From: Selaginella moellendorffii
Lineage: Eukaryota; Plantae; Lycopodiophyta
Length of the DNA stretch: 64,000 nt
Direction of reading: 5' to 3'
Assembly (NCBI RefSeq): GCF_000143415.4
Contig: NW_003314321.1
Span: forward strand, 62,001 to 126,000
Position 1 is the stretch's first letter; every line of letters starts with the position of its first letter. The translations under genes were made by a program, and so were the position numbers. Below the pieces are notes generated by a model that was not told the DNA's origin, ran no database searches, and was given only the letters and a program-made list of their open reading frames with translations. Shown one piece after another: positions 41,721 through 61,250 of this stretch.

Positions 41721-43918
41721 ATGTGGGCAAATATTCTTCCCAGGAGCTCGTCCTCTCGCGATGAAATGGGGGCGATCTCGGGCGCTGCCGCCAATGCAGC
41801 GCGATCCAAGCTGCCGCCGCTGCTGGATTTGCGCCTGGATCGGAAGGTATACAGGCCAGGTGATGCTGTCACCGCTACGGTCGAGATTTCCAACCCTGCC
41901 AGCGCTTCCGATGGCGGCGACTTGATTTTGGTGGAAGAATTTGCCGTGGAGGTGAGAGGGACGGAGAAACTGGATCCGCAATGGATCGTCACTCCAAAGC
42001 CTCCCGGATTGAAGCAAAAGAGAGGTTCGTGCCTGGCGAATTTCCAATTTTTTTAAAGCTCTTCACAGGCGAACGGATCTTTCTGGAATCTTGCGGACCT
42101 TTGGTTAGTGGCGTCTTCGTCGAGGGCGGATTGACGAGATCATGTAAGTTTTGGTTTCCCTGTGGTGAAGCGATTAAAAATGTCGACTGTCTTTTAAGTC
42201 GTAAATTTGCTTAGATCTTGTACGCACGGTTCTACCAAAGCTTCTTCCTCCGTCCTTCAGAGGCACAGCAGTACGATACTTTTACCATCTCACCGCAACT
42301 ATTCGGTGGAAATTTGTTGCCACTGAAAATGGTAGTTCATCGGTACAAGCTGCTCTTCCGCTGGTATGTAATGTTTTATTGTCCTAATATGAGAACGCTG
42401 GAACCATATGTAGGAGAAGCGCATTCCCATAACCGTTTGGACGATGCCTAACAACAGTGGACTTTCAGCTGAGCTCAACGAAAGCCATAAAAATGGCGGT
42501 CAGTTCTTTTTGGACTTGTCAAGCAATCTCGTTAAAACAAGTGTCTCAATGCACAGGCATTGTTCCATCGTCTCTTGTGGAGGCAGAATTGCAGTGGAAA
42601 GAAAATAGCGCCTACTCAGAATGGGTGAGTTGACTACAATGCCCACTAGTTGAAGTCTTGGCAAATGCAACGTTTTTATCTGGCAGACGGGGACGGCTAG
42701 TACTTTCTCAGGTTTAGAAGACGATATATCTAGTCAAGGATCCGAAAGTGTTTCCCATAGCCCGAAGGGAAGTCTGGAGAACAACTTTGATCGGCTGGTG
42801 CTCCAGTCTCCTGCATTGACTCCAAGGACGCAGCCGAGAAGCGAAGAGTCAAATCGACCAGCATTGAAGAAGCAGATATTGATGGCATCTTTTTCAGACG
42901 AAATCCCGAGTAAGTTACTGGAAGTTTGTTGTCGTGTTTTGTTTTGAGATCTATCTTTGCAGAACATTCTCAAAGGACACTGGACACATCGCTCTCTGGG
43001 AATTGGAGCCCATGGAATCGGTTCCCGATGGATGGTTTTCCAAGTGAGCAAGAGGATGACTCGAGAACCGACTCCTCCCCAGGTGAATCTATTTTCGGAG
43101 GCGTCAAACTAGAAGTTGAGCTGTTTCTTTCAGGCCACGTGAAGGGGAAAGCCTACAACATCAGGCTTGGCAATCAGGTTCTTGTGCGTATTTCACCCAA
43201 GAATCCTGATGCGGTTCATTACTTTGGAGACACTGTAAGTGCACACTTTCTCTCTCTCGTTTTTGACGTTACTCGTTGCAGATTGCTGGAGTTATCAGCT
43301 TTCCAGAAGAAAGTGATTCTCGAAAGTGCTTAGAGGTGAGAGAGATAATGATTGTGAAGTATCCAGCTGTAACAAGAGGAGAATGCAGGTTTCAGTGGTG
43401 CTGGAGATTCGCGAAGTACTCAACGTTTTGCATTTGCATCCTTCCCGGAAGAACTCGCAAGTCATATCCAAGGTACTGTTTGACTTTCCTTTCTTGTTCC
43501 TTCTCACGCTAGACAATCAACGCTAAACGATGCACAGATTCAATCCGAGTATCACGAAGTTGTCGCGGATGTTTCACAAACGCACTTCCTTTTCTCCATC
43601 CCTCTAGATGGCCCGGCTTCCTTCTCAACTCCTCACGTCACGGTACAGTGGGTTCTTCGTTTCGAGTTCGTGGCCACTCCAGGGAATGTTGAGTGGTCGA
43701 AGTACGCACATCCTCTCGAGATCAAAGACAGGGAGACGGGAGAGTGGACGCTGCCCATCACTGTTCATGCTCCACTGCCCCGGACGCACGGAGTAAGGAA
43801 GGACAGGCCAGTAGCTTCACTGAGAGATTTTTGGCTTCAATCCCCCAAGGCATCGGACTGGGTTGGCACTCCGCTGGGCTCACCGATTTTAGCCGGCCCG
43901 TCCAACGGTCACTTCTGA
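41721..43918 (+). CDS. RGP1: RGP1 (Ric1-Rgp1 RAB6 GEF subunit)-like, multi-exon
   Basis: LDRKVYRPGD, LPKLLPPSFRGTAVRYFY, YNIR...FGDT, FLFSIPLDGPASFSTPHVTVQWVLRFEF, WTLPITVH. Confidence 0.8.
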
Positions 43919-54387: not shown

Positions 54388-56769
54388 CTAGGGTTTGGAC
54401 AAACTTTCATGTCTCCTATTGCAAATTGTAATGGTGAAAAACTAGAGGTTCTCAAGCAAAATACACTAATGAAATTTTATAAAGATCCAATGGTTCAAGA
54501 GTTTTGATTGATGACAAAGGTTTAGGGTTTAAAAGGTGGCCTAGGGCTAGATATGAGTTTGGAAGATTGGGGCTTTTGCCTTCAAGGAAGAAGTATAGAT
54601 TTTATATTTTGGAGTTTTGGGTTTGAAGAGCCAAACTTTATCAAAGGAAAGGACACTTTATTATGTATTTTGACAAGAACCCTTATATTACATGTAAAGG
54701 ATATTATTCTTCACTTCTAAATTGGTCCTTTATAACTACATGTAGAACTTCTCCACCTTTAGATTGTTCACACAGGTTCAATTGGCAATGGAACACATTG
54801 ACAATATACTGAAGTTCCAATTTGTATAATATGGTTGTGTTGGCTGATTCCTTTCTTGCCTTGGTCGTGGCTTCACCACGATGAAAGCACTTGGAACACT
54901 ACCAATTGATATTTAAGGTATTAATTGATGTTTGAAGTGCTTTGAAGGGCATAACAAATTACATCAGACTAGTTTGCTATGGAAATCTAGCTTTAGCCCA
55001 GATTTGTAGTTCACCTTTGGTCATGAACTTTAGATAGATAGGGACAAAGGTATATCTATATTGGTATAAGGTTGTGGAATTGGCATAGCAATAATACACT
55101 TGCATGGCTTGATGGGAAGTTGGAAACAATGATCCCAGTTGAAGGGGATTAGCCACAGCAATGAGGAGTGGATTCCATAGCATCAACAATATCACTGTTA
55201 GTGGAGATTGTATGCTCCTCTTGATTTCACAACATCATGGGATTCAGGAGTATACATCTTCAAGGACTCTTTGTAGCCTATGAAATTGTATGTGCTACAC
55301 AGATGGAGAACAAGTGAGTATGGTGTATCTCAATTGATTTCAAGATAACTCAAGTTGTTTATGGAGTTTAAGTTATATGTTCCCTCTCAAGTTCAAGTTC
55401 AGCTCAAGTCCATCATATTGGTACAATGATGGCACACTCACACTAGAGAAATACGAGGCTAGAAATGATGGATAAGATATAAAGCTTACAACCAATAATG
55501 ATTTCGAGGTGCAGATTTGTAGACTATGAATCTGCATGGCACAAAATTAGACTATAGTTTCATAATCCTCCCTCTTATTACCCACTCTCTTTGAATTACT
55601 CTGTACCAATGTTTTAGCATGTCAAAACTAACATCTCTATAGTTTTTTAGAGGATAAATATGACGGGCCCCATTGACAAGGACACATGGATATTGCAGAT
55701 GACATGAATTTTATTTACAACTTCTAATACATGTTTAGTGTAGTGTACATGTGCCTTTCACCTTTGCATGTACAAAAGGTTTTGAGTTTGAACACAAGGT
55801 CATGTTGCACCTCACAGTCATGCTAGAGGTTGGACACATGTCTCATAACACCCTTCCCATGCATTTGTATTTGGAGCATACTGCTAGTACAGTAAAGAGA
55901 GGCATGTCTTGCATGTTATATATAAAAGAGAGTTTTCATAGTTATATGTCATTATATTTATTGTTGCATAAACTTGTAAAATTATTGTATAATAAACCCT
56001 ACAAAAGTGTTAAATCCCACAAAAGTGTTTTAATCATCTTATCTAATATTATATCTTGCCTAGACCACTCCACCTCAACCACTCAATGCTTATCAAAGAG
56101 GCCATATGAGAGTTAGATGGATGTCTTCAACATCCATGGCTTAGAGTTGGGCGAGATTCCTTAAAATATTCCACTGTTGGAATATTCTAGGGGTGTGAAG
56201 TGCAAGGATATATTCCCCTTCTTCCTCATTTTCTAGGCAATGAGTTCACATAAAAGATATATTCAAGCAGAATTTCAAAGTATAATAAAAAAGTGTTCTC
56301 TCCACTGTTGAGAGGCTTCCCTCTTAACATATTCACTCCCTTAATAGTAATATCTAAAATCAAGGGCTTCTTCACACGACCTGCAGCTGCTAGGGTGAAG
56401 CACTATCTCACATATGCAGCTCTACAAGCTAGCTAGAAGAATGCAATTGCAATTTTGGTTCTCCAACCAAGGATGACTTGGGCAAATGCTTTGAGGTGTC
56501 TGCAAAACATTGAGGCTATATGGAGCACGAGAGTGGAAATGTTATAGGCTATATACACTTCAAAAGCTCCAAATGATGCCTAGGTGGCAAAACTATATGC
56601 AAAAGGGAAAAACTCTAGGGTATTTGGGCATGCCAAGCCCAGACTTGCCAAGAATCAATATGCTTGTTGCTTGGAGATGGGCCACTGACTCAAGTTCCAT
56701 TGCTCCAAAACCTAACCTGTTACAGCAAGGCTAATGAGGAGTTTTACAATGCAAAGGCAATTATAGCAC

Positions 56770-56930
56770 TAAATAGGTGGCTCCTAGACTCTAGTTGTAC
56801 TAATCTTTTGGACAATAAGAAGAATATTTTTGAGTGTTATCAACTAAGCATTGGCAAACCTAGTCTTCATTTAAGCGACAATACCTTTATCCCAGTGGAA
56901 GGCATTGGCTCTCACTTGATCGTCACCAAG
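56770..56930 (+). mobile_element. Ty1/copia protease fragment
   Basis: WLLDSSCTN...F..Y...LSDNTFIPVEGIG resembles the copia W.lDSGas.H...laDg....v.G.G motif. Confidence 0.55.
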
Positions 56931-56961
56931 ATATGTGATCAAACTGCAGCGGTTACTGCTG

Positions 56962-57420
56962 TAGCATTCGATGCAAATCAGCATTTGATTAGAGTTGCAT
57001 GCATTGACATTACTACTGAGAAGCTTATCAGCAAGCTCAGCAGAGCTGTTGTTCAAGAAGAAGTGTCTACACGGAGCTTCCATTCTTTAGAGAATGTAAA
57101 GCCTCTCCCTCTCACCCAACCAGAGAACTTGTCGCTGACATTACCAGCAGGTCTCGAATGGAACTATTATCAACTGTGGTTTTTCCCATTTGCCTGCAAA
57201 GAGATTTTTTTGACACTGACCACATATTTCATGTGTGGCGATTATTGGCAGTTGGTGGCATTGCTGGTATTTGCGTGGGAGTGGCAGTTCTTGCTTTTGC
57301 TGTAGTTTTCTTGTAAGTGCTCCTCGCCTACCACGAGTGAAACTCCCATCGGGGCTGAACAAGACTGGTCCGGATCTGCCAAAATCGCCACAGAAAAGAA
57401 AATTGGTCACCAAACATAAC
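56962..57420 (+). pseudogene. 3' fragment of a paralogue of the dCache/VWA gene
   Basis: AFDANQHLIRVACIDI...KPLPLT versus AFDANQQLIGVACIDV...KPLPLA at 59342-59495. A TM-like segment (GGIAGICVGVAVLAFAVVFL*) follows. Confidence 0.75.
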
Positions 57421-57726
57421 TGGTTGAAAGAGAGTCTTGCTTCGTTTGCTTCCTGTACAACAGAAACTTGGCCGAGCCTGCGAGTAAACTTATTAGCAAC
57501 AATGACTTCGTCCCTTTAAAAAGTCAATGGACGTCTGTTGAAGTCAATTGAAGCTCCAACCCGAAGTTGCCTCGTCTCCTATGAGGATGGGTGATCTTGG
57601 CAATACGTAAGTCCACACGGTTTAGGCTAGCTTTGATCTGGTCACATAAAAATCAACAAGATGTTGGTTCGCTTGCTTCCAGGAGCTTGAGAAAATCAAC
57701 GCCACCACTTTTGCAGGTTTGAGCGA

Positions 57727-59896
57727 ATGGAGGACTATCTCTTGCTTAGATCCACCTTTTTATTAGTCTTGTCTTTGCTGCTAGCAAACGCTCAAGATAA
57801 CATCGAAACGGTGCTGGACGAGACCGACTTCCAGGTCCAGGCAATCGCGAATCAAGCAATCTTAAATCGAGCCAGTACTTGTGGTAAGCTCTTGAAGCTC
57901 AGGCTCAAACAACTTTGTAGAGCATTGTCACAGGAAGTCTAGCGGATTGCTCACTCAACACTTGCACAAGGCGCCCTTGCTGGCCGCAATCCAAGGATGA
58001 GATCCAAAAGCTCTCTTGCTTTGGAGTATTCCACAATGGAGACTGCACGTCTCAGGCAAATGGAACTTGCCAGAGCTTAAGCGTTTCAAGTCAAAGAACA
58101 TATCTCAGGTATTTAGTTTGTCAATTTACAGCTTTGACTTGAGATGTTGATATGATCATCCAGAGTCCCACCCGATGCTCCGGAGAAAGATCGAGATTTT
58201 CAGACGGTCTTGTGTGCTCAGAAATCTCTAGATAAGAAGCTACAACAGGCCTGGGATAACACGAGGAAGTTCTCCCTTGGCTGGGCATTCTTTGGAGGGA
58301 TTGAAGGATACTTGTATGTTTACCCAGGCCGGGTAAGTGCACACTAAGCATTTCTTCCCTGCAAGCGAGAGCTTATAAATGTGTTCATATTGACAGGACT
58401 ATGTCGACAGTTGGCAGTGTGATATTTACGATCCAAGGCTCAGGCCATGGTTTCTCAATGCTTTGGCGGTCCAAAAATCGCTCTACATTCTCTTGGAAAC
58501 CTCCACTTCCATGAGCAATCCCACTGGAGTTTTATCCTCCCAAACCCGCTTTAATGTTGCAAATAACATCATTAAAAAGCTGCTAAACACCCTCACGAAT
58601 GGAGATCAAGTGGCTGTGTCAACAATTGGTGGTGAGAAAATCGGAGCTCCAGTTAAGTTTTTCATCAGAGACAAGGATAACTTCTGATCATGAGGTTCTG
58701 AAATCCAGGTTTCCGTAGTTCTTGGCGTCCAGGAAACCTCTTTGGATCTGGCTGGAATCTCATCCCTCAAAGATTCCATAAGCAACACAAGTGTTACAAA
58801 CTCAGCCAGTAACATAAAGAATGGGCTGCAAGCAGCACTTGATTTCTTCAACACCAGCTCCAACTTAAATGTAAGATGCTTTTCGTGTGATAATCACAAG
58901 AAATCACATTGGTTTCTTCAACTTTCCAAATCCCAGGTCATAATCCTCTTCACAGATGGACAGTTTGTCACCCCTGGCAATTTCAACTTCACCCAATTGA
59001 GCCCAGTTTTGGCACAGCTGAACGCAAGAGGTGTTGTAGTGTTTGTCTACAGAATCGGGTCCTTCACAACCAACGATGCCACTTTCCAGCAAATGCAGAG
59101 CAGCCTCAACATGAGCTACGAGGTCATCAACGACGACAAAAACCCGCTGCTCAAGGTCCACAGCTATTTCGACTACATTGCATGGGTTCGCTTTGTTGCT
59201 GTCAACAAGAAACCAGTTTGGGCGAGTTTGTATACCGATTCTGCTGGCCTTGGCAATGTGACAACTTCCATCTTTCCAGGTTTGTATAGTACTATTATTT
59301 ATTACTCTGCTTCTTCTTAGTAATTATTTTAATTTCATGCAGCTTTTGATGCAAATCAACAGTTGATTGGAGTTGCATGTATAGATGTTCTTGCTGATGG
59401 GCTAATCGCGGAGCTTGGCCAGCCTACAGTTGAGAAAGCTATATCTAAACGATACTTTGATCCTTCACAGCAAAAGCCTCTTCCTCTCGCTTTGACAGTT
59501 ACGTACAAATTTTTGGAACTTTTGTTTTGTTTTTCAGTTGAGAGAAATTTGATTTTGCAGCTCGCCAATGCGACTATCAGCTGTGACTTCCATGGCAGCC
59601 TGGCTCCAATCTGTCCAAGAGGCGACTTTTCCACGTCCATGAGGGAGTTTATATGTTGTGGAGCTTGTGCTGTTACAGCCAGTGCTTCTCCTCCTCATCC
59701 CGCAAAGAAGCTAACGAGAAAAGTAAGTGCTGGTATTGCTGTGGGTGGAATGGTCACCACTTGTGCCATCTTCGTTTCTGCCGCGTTTTTGTGTCGCAAG
59801 TGCCACAAAGCTCCAGCAACTGGAAGTGATAATGACCAACCTCAAGAACCGGACTGGGTGGTTCCAATGAGATCTCCTCAAAAAGAAAACTTGTAA
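57727..59896 (+). CDS. alpha2delta/CACHD1-like type I membrane protein: signal peptide, Cys-rich N-terminus, dCache_1 with inserted VWA, single TM, short tail; multi-exon
   Basis: WAFFGGIEGYLYVYPG, YDPRLRPWF, ILLETSTSM, IILFTDG, WASLYTDSAGLG, LIGVACIDV, TM GIAVGGMVTTCAIFVSAAFLCRK. Confidence 0.88.
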
Positions 59897-60119
59897 TCTT
59901 ACTCCTCAGACCCTTCCAAAACTATATAATTGCTTATTGCTATTTTATAATGGGATTTTGATTAATTCTCTTAATCATGTATATAAATTTATATATTAAA
60001 AAGTAATAAAATCAATATACAATCCAAATTACAATCATTCCAGATGTCAATCACTAAAGAAGTATTTTAGTTAATACTTCTAAAATTATCATAATGGAGT
60101 TAAATTTCCCTAGATCCAT

Positions 60120-60121
<2 letters not shown>

Positions 60122-60170
<49 letters not shown>
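60122..60170. repeat. (AT)n microsatellite
   Basis: Read directly. Confidence 0.95.
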
Positions 60171-60174
<4 letters not shown>

Positions 60175-61250
60175 TATACAGACATTACACTATCCTTTCA
60201 TTTAGAGGATGGAAAGTTGATGATGATAAGTTATATAAAACATCTAAAACTTTTACTAGGTGATTATAGACTACTACAAGAATTTGAAGCACCTATAAAA
60301 CCATCAAATATAATTGTTTATAATCATGAATAAAACAAAACTTAAAGCCATGGCACAAATATCAATTGACCAAGGAATCTTAATGAACTAATTATAACTC
60401 CAAGTGCAATTGCTAAATACTCAAATCAACCTCAAAGACTTAATTTTAAACTAAAATAAAGGATTTCAAAAGCCACTACAATTTATAAAGCATTATTTTA
60501 ACAAAGAATATATCACATTTCTAAGTTTGCCCATCAATGATCCTTTGAGATCATTATTAATTTAGACTCGTAACCATTAGCAAAATTTACCTTTACATCT
60601 TTCCTTTAATAAGCTCTATTTCGTTAAAGTGGGAATTGTCATTATCCCACTTGTAAAATAAGGTTTCCAAACCTTTATATAGTATATAAATATAACAAAA
60701 TTCAACTGCATTGAGGCACATGCCATTTTATTTTAAACAAGGAAATGTTTACTCAATCACTTCTCCTCCCCCTGCCACTACTTCACCTCTCTCTTCTCCT
60801 TGTCATTGTCGTCCAATTTCTTTCCATCCTTTTAATATTGGCTTAGTTGCTCCGAGTCTAGGTGGAGCCCAAGTCCCCATTCAATCTTTACTTTCCCCTT
60901 ATTAATAAAACAACTTCGTAGACTTCCAAAAACATGCTGTAACATTTCTAGTATAATGCAAATCCTCTCAAAGAATTGTCTTTTAATATTAATACAATGG
61001 CATGGAACCCCATGCCATAATAAGTTACATTTTTAAATAAATACATGCCATCTCAGACTGTTATTTTTTGCCTCCAACGCCTATACAATAATCTTGGAAT
61101 TTCATCACTCTCCACACTATCAGGATTTAAACCCAATAGTAATGCCATCTCTTCTCTAATACGTCCACGCTCATGTTCAGTGGTCGAAGAACCCATCCGG
61201 TTGAGCAGATTATGGAGATGCGGATAGTGCTTGGTTAGACAATATACATG

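What the first reader, a model, noticed from the sequence alone, without database searches (positions are those of the whole stretch)
57727..59896. alpha2delta-like plant receptor with an intact dCache_1 amino-acid-binding motif
Seen after splicing: Y-DPRL-R-P-W, then the VWA insert, then W..LY.D and, 30 residues after that Tyr, the Asp of VACID. There is one dCache domain, one TM and a ~35-aa tail with no kinase. The MIDAS reads ETSTS instead of DxSxS. Known: YxxxxRxW...Y...D is the amino-acid-sensing motif shared by bacterial chemoreceptors and animal alpha2delta/CACHD1, where VWA is inserted at the same place. Inference: a compact extracellular amino-acid/GABA sensor or channel auxiliary subunit in a seed-free plant.
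Basis: partly seen in the sequence, partly recalled or inferred. Interest (0 to 1): 0.72.

Follow-up and report, generated by a model that had tools for sequence, protein, structure and literature searches.

The report
Spikemoss alpha2delta-like Cache-VWA membrane protein
This is a real, intact gene of the spikemoss Selaginella moellendorffii for a cell-surface protein built like the ligand-binding front half of the animal calcium-channel subunit alpha2delta, with the amino-acid-binding residues kept. The protein class was already reported in non-flowering plants in 2022, and its function in plants is still untested.

Summary
An 8-exon gene (57727-59896, + strand) encodes a 583-aa type I membrane protein. 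It has a signal peptide, a long helix, a Cys-rich stretch, one Cache (PDC) module split by a VWA domain, a Cys-rich stalk, one TM helix and a 34-aa tail without a kinase. The motif residues are Y178, R183, W185, Y405 and D435, and the MIDAS start reads ETSTS.

RNA reads show all seven introns. A family profile matches solved alpha2delta-1 at E 1.7e-47, residue for residue on the gabapentin/leucine-binding motif. A model of an 86%-identical paralogue matches alpha2delta-1 at Z 29.

It is not new as a class. Gumerov et al. 2022 (PMC8915833) reported single dCache_1AA-plus-VWA proteins in Streptophyta, including kinase fusions, and found none in angiosperms. This scan also found the family twice before on other DNA of this genome.

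- Relatives occur in liverworts, mosses, a fern and gymnosperms, so the family is not confined to seed-free plants.
- A channel-subunit role is unlikely, because land plants lack four-domain Cav channels.
- The Glu at the MIDAS site is private to this haplotype; the allele, the paralogues, all relatives and all RNA reads have Asp.
- RefSeq's model of this locus (XP_024544745.1) is a truncated chimera.
- Ligand binding remains untested.

The parts
57727..59896 (+). Whole coding gene: 8 exons (57727-57883, 57934-58108, 58164-58332, 58397-58651, 58709-58870, 58937-59279, 59343-59497, 59561-59896 including the stop), encoding 583 aa
   Evidence: Hand splice model, all introns GT..AG, single open frame. 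All 7 junctions are seen in RNA reads or contigs. Colinear with full-length paralogues.
57727..57792 (+). Signal peptide, residues 1-22, ending ..LLANA before QDN
   Evidence: Hydrophobic N-terminus. Read from the sequence; no predictor was run.
57793..58332 (+). N-terminal ectodomain (exons 1-3): long helix, a Cys-rich stretch with family-conserved cysteines, and the first strands of the Cache module
   Evidence: AF2 model of paralogue P0001: helix up to residue 49, low-confidence Cys-rich part 50-120, strands 153-157 and 162-165. Conserved Cys columns.
58427..58450 (+). N-terminal half of the amino-acid motif: Y178-D-P-R-L-R183-P-W185, followed by F186 where bacteria and alpha2delta have Tyr
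   Evidence: Sequence. Aligned to the alpha2delta-1 segment Y238..R243..W245. R and W are invariant in the relatives that cover these positions, apart from two short fragment rows that are probably misaligned (P0018, P0071).
58475..59203 (+). VWA domain (about residues 194-395, spanning exons 4-6 and two introns), inserted into the Cache module
   Evidence: Pfam VWA_2 and VWA pass their cut-offs on paralogues P0001 and P0032. Exon pieces of the window copy are weak. VWA structures match at Z 18-20 over model residues 191-390.
58496..58510 (+). MIDAS start E201-T-S203-T-S205. Glu (GAA) stands where allele P0031, the paralogues and all aligned relatives have Asp
   Evidence: Sequence. Asp is invariant in the 20 rows that cover this column, apart from one fragment row that is probably misaligned (P0027, Ile). 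RNA reads show A>C at 58498 in 80/80 and 48/48 reads.
59231..59233 (+). Y405 of W..LY.D, the first residue of the C-terminal half of the motif (amino-group contact in PctA and alpha2delta-1)
   Evidence: Invariant in all 42 aligned rows. Aligned with Y452 of alpha2delta-1.
59384..59386 (+). D435 of VACID, the last motif residue, 30 residues after Y405
   Evidence: Sequence. Aligned with D493 of alpha2delta-1. Asp in most relatives, Thr in Ceratodon, Asn in Riccia.
59387..59722 (+). Helical linker and Cys-rich juxtamembrane stalk (C..C..CC..C pattern shared by relatives). No second PDC module is predicted
   Evidence: pLDDT below 50 for residues 464-539 of the model. Conserved CC pattern in the relatives' C-terminal parts.
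59723..59791 (+). Transmembrane helix, about residues 527-549
   Evidence: Hydropathy scan. Helix 539-555 in the P0001 model.
59792..59896 (+). Cytoplasmic tail of 34 residues plus the stop codon. No kinase. An acidic-Trp patch (EPDW) is shared with the Selaginella paralogues
   Evidence: Translation. Tails compared.
56630..57313 (+). Silent 3' remnant of a paralogue (Cache C-half, linker, TM-like stretch), wrongly joined to this gene in RefSeq model XP_024544745.1
   Evidence: tblastn. Essentially no RNA depth over 56500-57642 (zero in X1, X3 and X21; at most 0.35 in X22). P0033 maps 100% to 56630-56728 and to exons 1-5, then to 59040-59096 in another frame.

Best explanation
**What it is.** The locus encodes a kinase-less member of the eukaryotic family of a single Cache module with a VWA insertion and the amino-acid motif (dCache_1AA, Gumerov et al. 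2022). It belongs to a Selaginella-specific expansion of that family.

**Shown here.**
- The gene is intact and spliced as modelled.
- The locus, or its 97.6%-identical allele, is transcribed.
- The ectodomain is homologous in sequence and fold to the first Cache module plus VWA of alpha2delta-1 and CACHD1.
- The residues that hold the carboxyl group (R183, W185, with Y178) and the amino group (Y405, D435) of an amino-acid ligand in PctA and alpha2delta-1 sit at the aligned positions. They are conserved from liverworts to gymnosperms.

**Inferred.**
- The protein sits in the plasma membrane with the Cache-VWA part in the apoplast.
- It binds a small amino-acid-like ligand in the Cache pocket. 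The pocket is probably narrower than in alpha2delta-1, because Leu161 stands where alpha2delta-1 has Ala217.
- It passes the signal on through a partner protein: either by the metal-site face of the VWA domain or by its short tail.
- A moss relative does the same job with a fused Ser/Thr kinase.

**Confidence.** About 0.9 for family identity. About 0.5 for amino-acid-type ligand sensing. The overall figure reflects the mechanism.
For: **Gene model and expression.**
- Gene model.
- All seven introns are seen in RNA, from a stranded library consistent with + strand transcripts.

**Homology.**
- Paralogues and the allele are colinear over their full length.
- The family profile hits alpha2delta-1 at E 1.7e-47 (profile 107-455 to residues 160-502), CACHD1 at 1.4e-22, PctA at 8e-6, and other bacterial Cache sensors.
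- In that alignment the motif residues lie on Y238/R243/W245, Y452 and D493 of alpha2delta-1.
- AF2 model of P0001: pTM 0.72, core pLDDT 80-95, with a five-stranded sheet made from strands on both sides of the VWA.
- Foldseek E 2e-21. VIA Z 29 over about 415 residues to alpha2delta-1 and Z 24 to CACHD1, against Z 18-20 for plain VWA domains.
- The nearest Atlas clusters are alpha2delta-1 and -3 and a diatom VWA family.

**Conservation.** R, W and the second Tyr are conserved in every full-length relative. Asp is kept in most.

**Receptor context.**
- The same ectodomain is fused to a protein kinase in Physcomitrium patens XP_024368104.
- The land-plant sequences form one clade, and the five Selaginella copies form another within it.

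**Literature.** The published class description matches (PMC8915833).
Against: - No binding data exist for any plant member.
- Model coordinates could not be read, so convergence of the five residues in one pocket rests on homology to solved structures and not on measured distances.
- The residue after Trp is Phe rather than Tyr.
- Two plant relatives have lost the motif Asp (Thr in Ceratodon, Asn in Riccia), so ligand binding is not universal in the family. In PctA, D173N abolishes binding.
- The window copy carries Glu at the otherwise invariant first MIDAS Asp. No RNA read shows that codon.
- Most reads laid on exons 1-5 come from paralogue P0030, and those on exons 6-8 come from a P0031-type allele. 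Expression of this exact haplotype rests on a few X1 contigs.
- The model is of an 86%-identical paralogue, not of the window protein itself.
Confidence: 0.6

Rival explanations
1. It is an alpha2delta-like auxiliary subunit. It binds an ion channel through its VWA metal site and controls the channel's trafficking or gating, as alpha2delta does for Cav1 and Cav2.
For: The best sequence and structure matches are alpha2delta-1. NCBI names paralogue P0032 'voltage-dependent calcium channel subunit alpha-2/delta-4'. The MIDAS residues are conserved in relatives.
Against: - Land plants lack four-domain Cav/Nav channels (PMC5824947, PMC6509283).
- The protein has one Cache module, not two nested dCache_1 domains.
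- It has a TM helix and a tail rather than a delta peptide with a lipid anchor.
- The window copy has Glu at the first MIDAS position.
- CACHD1, an equally close relative, works with Frizzled and LRP6 rather than only with channels (entry titles 8s7c and 9eq6).
Confidence: 0.07
2. It is a ligand-independent adhesion or scaffold protein. The VWA domain binds a wall or membrane protein, and the Cache motif is kept only because it stabilises the fold.
For: VWA is the only domain that passes Pfam cut-offs. The MIDAS Asp and the TDG Asp are as conserved as the Cache motif. Two relatives have replaced the motif Asp.
Against: R, W and the second Tyr are conserved in every full-length relative across roughly 450 My of land-plant divergence (the time depth is general knowledge). 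These are exactly the ligand-contact positions shown by mutation in PctA and alpha2delta-1. The kinase fusion in moss points to a receptor role.
Confidence: 0.2
3. This particular copy is a decaying or silent duplicate. The family's function is carried by the allele and by paralogues P0001, P0030 and P0032.
For: - Glu replaces the invariant MIDAS Asp only here.
- None of 128 RNA reads over the codon shows GAA.
- Reads over exons 6-8 in X21 and X22 carry the P0031-type residues.
- A dead paralogue fragment lies directly upstream.
Against: - The frame is fully open and all splice sites are intact.
- Only 13 residues differ from the allele, and Asp to Glu is conservative.
- X1 contigs match the window haplotype at 59186 and 59244 and carry the spliced 59497/59561 junction.
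- The RNA samples may simply be another genotype.
Confidence: 0.1

Closest known systems
Eukaryotic single-dCache_1AA proteins with a VWA insertion (Gumerov et al. 2022, PNAS, PMC8915833), reported in Archaeplastida/Streptophyta but not in angiosperms
   Same: One Cache domain split by a VWA at the same point. The motif Y-x4-R-x-W ... Y-x29-D is present. It is a membrane-anchored extracellular protein in a non-flowering plant.
   Different: Nothing essential differs; this is a member. Here no second (membrane-proximal) PDC module is predicted, the residue after Trp is Phe, and this haplotype has Glu at the first MIDAS position.
Animal Cav auxiliary subunit alpha2delta-1 (e.g. PDB 6jp5, 7vfs, 8fd7)
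   Same: The first Cache module plus VWA are homologous (E 1.7e-47; Z 29). The gabapentin/leucine-contact residues are aligned and kept.
   Different: It is about half the size, with one Cache module instead of two nested dCache_1 domains. It has a TM helix with a 34-aa tail instead of a cleaved, lipid-anchored delta. Leu stands at the Ala217 selectivity position. No Cav partner exists in land plants.
CACHD1 (PDB 8s7c, 9eq6), an alpha2delta-like type I membrane protein
   Same: Cache-VWA core (E 1.4e-22; Z 24). Single-pass TM with a cytoplasmic tail. The MIDAS of the window copy also departs from the canonical motif (that CACHD1's MIDAS is non-canonical is my recollection, not checked here).
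   Different: CACHD1 has two dCache_1 domains and keeps the motif in the second one. Here the motif is in the VWA-bearing module, as in alpha2delta.
Physcomitrium patens Cache-VWA receptor kinase XP_024368104 (P0047)
   Same: Same ectodomain family, same Cys-rich stalk and a single TM. It falls within the same land-plant clade.
   Different: The moss protein carries a Ser/Thr kinase domain. The Selaginella protein ends 34 residues after the membrane.
Bacterial dCache_1AA chemoreceptors such as PctA (PDB 5ltx, 5t65)
   Same: Same motif and PDC fold. The profile hits the PctA motif region at E 8e-6.
   Different: The bacterial domain has two PDC modules, no VWA insert and a cytoplasmic signalling domain.

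Membership tests
Eukaryotic single-dCache_1AA + VWA family (Gumerov 2022) | Cache/PDC module homologous to the dCache_1 distal module | tested here: met
   Profile hits alpha2delta-1 (1.7e-47), CACHD1, PctA (8e-6), a diguanylate cyclase sensor (2e-8) and Tlp3. Five-stranded sheet in the model. Z 29. Pfam dCache_1 and MCP-like_PDC_1 are only sub-threshold or borderline on relatives.
Eukaryotic single-dCache_1AA + VWA family (Gumerov 2022) | VWA domain inserted inside the Cache module, between the two halves of the motif | tested here: met
   Motif N-half at residues 178-185, VWA at about 194-395, motif C-half at 405/435.
Eukaryotic single-dCache_1AA + VWA family (Gumerov 2022) | AA_motif: Y-x4-R-x-W(-Y) ... 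Y-x(27-34)-D | tested here: met
   Y178, R183, W185, Y405 and D435, with 29 residues between the last two. The optional Tyr after Trp is Phe186 (definition).
Eukaryotic single-dCache_1AA + VWA family (Gumerov 2022) | Complete double-Cache (distal plus membrane-proximal PDC module) | tested here: inconclusive
   No second module in the AF2 model. Residues 464-539 have pLDDT below 50 with a shallow alignment. The profile's C-terminal part has no match in alpha2delta.
Eukaryotic single-dCache_1AA + VWA family (Gumerov 2022) | Binds amino acids through the motif | not testable with these tools
   Needs protein and a binding assay. Coordinates of the model are not available for docking.
Cav alpha2delta subunits | Two nested dCache_1 domains (about 1000-1100 aa) | tested here: not met
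   583 aa. Only the first-Cache-plus-VWA part of alpha2delta-1 (residues 160-502) is matched.
Cav alpha2delta subunits | Canonical MIDAS DxSxS..T..D | tested here: not met
   The window copy reads ExSxS, with Ser at the aligned Thr position and the Asp of TDG kept. Paralogues read DxSxS.
Cav alpha2delta subunits | A Cav alpha1 partner in the same organism | not tested
   The literature says embryophytes lack four-domain channels (PMC5824947, PMC6509283). The Selaginella genome was not searched here.
Cav alpha2delta subunits | Cleavage into alpha2 and delta, with a lipid anchor | tested here: not met
   There is a clear TM helix followed by a basic stretch and a 34-aa tail. Cleavage itself is not testable.
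CACHD1 | Two dCache_1 domains with the motif in the second one | tested here: not met
   Single module. The motif lies in the VWA-bearing module.
Plant receptor-like kinases | Cytoplasmic protein kinase domain | tested here: not met
   The frame stops 34 residues after the TM. The kinase is present in moss relative P0047.
Pfam VWA (PF00092 / PF13519) | Score above the gathering cut-off | tested here: inconclusive
Exon 4 scores 23.5 bits against a cut-off of 27, and exon 6 scores 15.4 against 23.8. The 86%-identical P0001 passes both (45.4 and 44.1 bits).

The most novel reading that the evidence does not exclude
In a lineage that has lost Cav channels, the kinase-less Cache-VWA proteins act as apoplastic amino-acid or GABA-type sensors. 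They gate or traffic a different partner (for example a GLR-type channel or a receptor kinase) through the VWA metal site. That would be a plant counterpart of the alpha2delta/CACHD1 principle and a previously unknown route of amino-acid perception in non-flowering plants.
Probability: 0.12. Interest if true: 0.75.

Novelty: new member of a known kind. Interest (0 to 1): 0.3.

Why it matters
No plant member of this ancient sensor family has been studied experimentally. How non-flowering plants use an alpha2delta-type amino-acid pocket without Cav channels, and why flowering plants lost it, are open questions. This report adds three things.

- **A corrected gene model.** The 583-aa model replaces a RefSeq model at this locus that is a truncated chimera.
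- **A natural variant.** One haplotype carries Asp-to-Glu at the VWA metal site.
- **A hint on ligand size.** The pocket position that blocks gabapentinoids in alpha2delta-3 and -4 is Leu here and Phe in most plant relatives, which points to small ligands.

The class itself and its presence in Streptophyta are already published, so the finding is confirmatory and not a discovery.

Tried and rejected
1. **Pfam on single exons.** Only weak VWA hits came back. The spliced protein has no reference and was not typed in, so whole-protein scans and the fold used paralogue P0001 (86% identical).
2. **Word-index protein searches.** These returned only 8-9 hits each, mostly Selaginella or Cryptomeria/Ginkgo. 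They missed relatives that the exhaustive search with exon 6 had found, so they say little about absence. No angiosperm hit appeared in any search, but that is not proof.
3. **The look-up of encoding contigs for P0031 and P0001.** Nothing was on record, so the allelic locus and dN/dS could not be examined.
4. **Supplementary tables of Gumerov 2022.** They are not held, so I could not check whether this very gene is in their dataset.
5. **Literature on plant members.** Searches for Selaginella with alpha2delta, or for a Cache-VWA receptor kinase, found nothing.
6. **A second full paralogue in the window.** I looked for one and rejected it. Only the 3' remnant at 56630-57313 is present. Weak non-colinear matches near 42.7 kb are taken as chance.
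7. **Most laid RNA reads as evidence for this exact copy.** Rejected after codon-by-codon comparison showed that they carry paralogue or allele residues.
Full report
**1. What is in the sequence.** Reading 57000-60600 and translating the three + frames shows coding blocks separated by short introns. Joining them at GT..AG sites gives one open frame of 1752 nt, or 583 codons. The exons are 57727-57883, 57934-58108, 58164-58332, 58397-58651, 58709-58870, 58937-59279, 59343-59497 and 59561-59896.

The product has these features:
- a hydrophobic N-terminal signal;
- 18 cysteines and 7 N-glycosylation sequons;
- a hydrophobic helix at about residues 527-549, followed by basic residues;
- a 34-residue tail.

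- Y178-DPRL-R183-P-W185 at 58427-58450;
- E201-T-S-T-S at 58496-58510;
- W401..L-Y405-T-D;
- D435 of VACID at 59384-59386, exactly 30 residues after Y405.

**2. Is the gene model real?** Raw stranded RNA reads (X21, X22) and transcript contigs (X1, X3) were laid on 56500-60300. They show all seven junctions at the predicted places.
- 57883/57934, 58332/58397, 58651/58709 and 58870/58937 are supported by 10-63 reads per run.
- 59279/59343 is supported by 6 reads in each of the two raw runs.
- 59497/59561 is supported by 5 reads and by contigs in two runs.
- The reference form of 58108/58164 is supported by 5 reads in X21.
- Depth is confined to 57643-59928.
- First mates lie on the minus strand. 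In most stranded libraries this means + strand RNA.

The protein is colinear end to end with S. moellendorffii proteins. These are P0001 (LOC9633548, 86%), P0030 (LOC9663133), P0031 (SELMODRAFT_402207, 97.6% over aligned residues with 13 differences) and P0032 (53%).

**3. Which genome, and what the public annotation says.** RefSeq protein XP_024544745.1 (P0033, LOC9644222, 472 aa) maps at 100% to the window, so the window is the S. moellendorffii reference. However, that model:
- starts in an upstream fragment (56630-57313);
- runs through exons 1-5;
- then jumps to 59040-59096 in another frame.

It therefore lacks the second half of the VWA, Y405, D435 and the TM helix. The upstream fragment is the 3' third of a dead paralogue: a Cache C-half, a linker and a TM-like stretch. 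It has essentially no RNA depth: none in X1, X3 or X21, and at most 0.35 in X22.

**4. Whose transcripts are these?** Most reads are only 95-99% alike. Translating the listed differences gives the following.
- Over exons 1-5 the majority of reads carry the residues of paralogue P0030 (N31, Q39, K64, P93, K145, G173, L177, T189, Q228). They also carry its three-letter-longer form of the start of exon 3.
- Over exons 6-8 the X21 and X22 reads carry P0031-type residues (V390L, A409V, P569L).
- X1 contigs keep the window letters at 59186 and 59244 and carry the spliced 59497/59561 junction.

So the locus or its allele is transcribed and spliced as modelled. Expression of exactly this haplotype rests on thin evidence.

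**5. The Glu at the metal site.** Codon 201 is GAA in the window. At 58498 all 80 (X21) and 48 (X22) reads, and the X1 contig, read C, which gives Asp. Asp stands there in P0031, in every paralogue and in every relative that confidently covers the column, from liverwort to gymnosperm. The one other residue in that column is an Ile in a probably misaligned fragment row (P0027). ETSTS is therefore a private variant of this haplotype, or an assembly error, and not a trait of the protein class. Paralogues read DxSxS. Ser lies at the aligned MIDAS Thr position, and the Asp of TDG is kept.

**6. Homology.**
- Pfam on single exons gives only weak VWA hits.
- On the paralogues, VWA_2 and VWA pass their cut-offs. 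Cache models are sub-threshold or borderline.
- A profile of 11 family members against all solved structures hits alpha2delta-1 at E 1.7e-47 over profile positions 107-455, equal to alpha2delta-1 residues 160-502.
- The same profile hits CACHD1 at 1.4e-22, PctA at 8e-6 and several other bacterial Cache sensors.
- In the printed alignment the family's YDPRxRPW lies on alpha2delta-1 Y238..R243..W245. W..Y.D lies on Y452, and GVxxxD lies on D493.
- These are the residues that Gumerov et al. define as the AA_motif and that were tested by mutation in PctA and alpha2delta-1 (PMC8915833).

**7. Fold.** AlphaFold2 was run on P0001 with a 42-row alignment. The window protein itself has no reference and was not typed in. 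The model has pTM 0.72 and mean pLDDT 71.6, with the core at 80-95.
- A PDC-type sheet is built from strands 153-157 and 162-165 before the VWA, and 402-408, 415-424 and 430-439 after it.
- Residues 464-539 have pLDDT below 50, and no second PDC module appears.
- Foldseek puts alpha2delta-1 first (E 2e-21) and CACHD1 next.
- VIA-align gives Z 29 over about 415 residues for alpha2delta-1 and Z 24 for CACHD1, against Z 18-20 for plain VWA domains.
- The Atlas gives alpha2delta-1 and -3 clusters and a diatom family.

That the five residues form one pocket is therefore inferred from residue-level homology to solved structures, not measured.

**8. Distribution and family structure.** The exhaustive search with exon 6 found 29 representatives. 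Named relatives come from:
- Marchantia, Riccia, Ceratodon and Physcomitrium;
- Psilotum;
- Cryptomeria and Ginkgo.

No angiosperm appeared, although the searches are not exhaustive for that purpose. In Physcomitrium the same ectodomain is fused to a protein kinase (XP_024368104, 966 aa).

R, W and the second Tyr are conserved in every full-length relative. The first position is Tyr or Phe. The final Asp is Thr in Ceratodon and Asn in Riccia. A tree places all land-plant sequences in one clade (100/97) and the five Selaginella copies in one clade (100/100), with the window gene next to P0031. A Cys-rich stalk with a CC pair before the TM helix is shared across the family.

**9. What is already known.** Gumerov et al. 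2022 state the following:
- dCache_1AA proteins occur in Archaeplastida but not in angiosperms;
- all eukaryotic ones carry the VWA insertion;
- single-dCache forms exist;
- in some Streptophyta the domain sits in a Ser/Thr kinase.

NCBI already names paralogue P0032 as an alpha-2/delta-4-like protein. This scan reported the family twice on other DNA of this genome (s1-424067, s1-422245). No experimental work on plant members was found.

**10. How it most likely works.**

*Shown:* it is an intact, spliced gene encoding a secreted-type ectodomain homologous to the ligand-binding Cache module plus VWA of alpha2delta, with conserved ligand-anchor residues.

*Inferred:* it is a cell-surface sensor of a small amino-acid-like ligand. 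It signals through a partner, because it has no kinase.

- The VWA metal-site residues are as conserved as the Cache motif. That fits metal-dependent partner binding, as in alpha2delta (PMC9901441).
- The selectivity position Ala217 of alpha2delta-1 is Phe in the non-binding alpha2delta-3 and -4. It aligns with Leu161 here and with Phe in most plant relatives. Gabapentin or bulky amino acids are therefore less likely ligands than small ones.
- A Cav-subunit role is unlikely, because embryophytes lack four-domain channels.

**11. Verdict.** This is a member of a published class, with a corrected gene model and a haplotype-specific metal-site variant as small additions.

Noticed in passing
window 56630-57313 (+): Dead 3' fragment of a paralogue (Cache C-half, linker, TM-like stretch) directly upstream of the gene, with essentially no RNA depth. 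RefSeq XP_024544745.1 fuses it to exons 1-5 of the real gene and then mis-splices to 59040.
   Followed up: yes
window 58496-58498: GAA (Glu) at the first MIDAS position. All 128 RNA reads, the allele P0031, the paralogues and all plant relatives have Asp. This is either a haplotype-private variant or an assembly error.
   Followed up: partly
window 57727-58651 versus 58937-59896: RNA reads laid at 95% likeness are a mixture. Over exons 1-5 they mostly carry paralogue P0030 (LOC9663133) residues. Over exons 6-8 they mostly carry the P0031-type allele. Depth here therefore overstates expression of this exact copy.
   Followed up: yes
window 60122-60170: A (TA)n microsatellite of about 50 bases lies in the AT-rich stretch downstream of the gene. 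The reads tool skipped it as a repeat.
   Followed up: no
window 57717-57765: Three X21 reads skip 47 bases (TT..TT ends) across the start codon region. This is not a canonical intron and is unexplained.
   Followed up: no
P0047 / P0048 (Physcomitrium patens XP_024368104, XP_024368103): The moss relative with the same Cache-VWA ectodomain carries a protein kinase. NCBI names it 'receptor-like protein kinase THESEUS 1'. That name reflects only the kinase, not the ectodomain.
   Followed up: partly
window 42717-42931 (-): Two weak, non-colinear tblastn matches to the protein (E about 1-2), one containing SRLRPW. They are probably chance.
   Followed up: no
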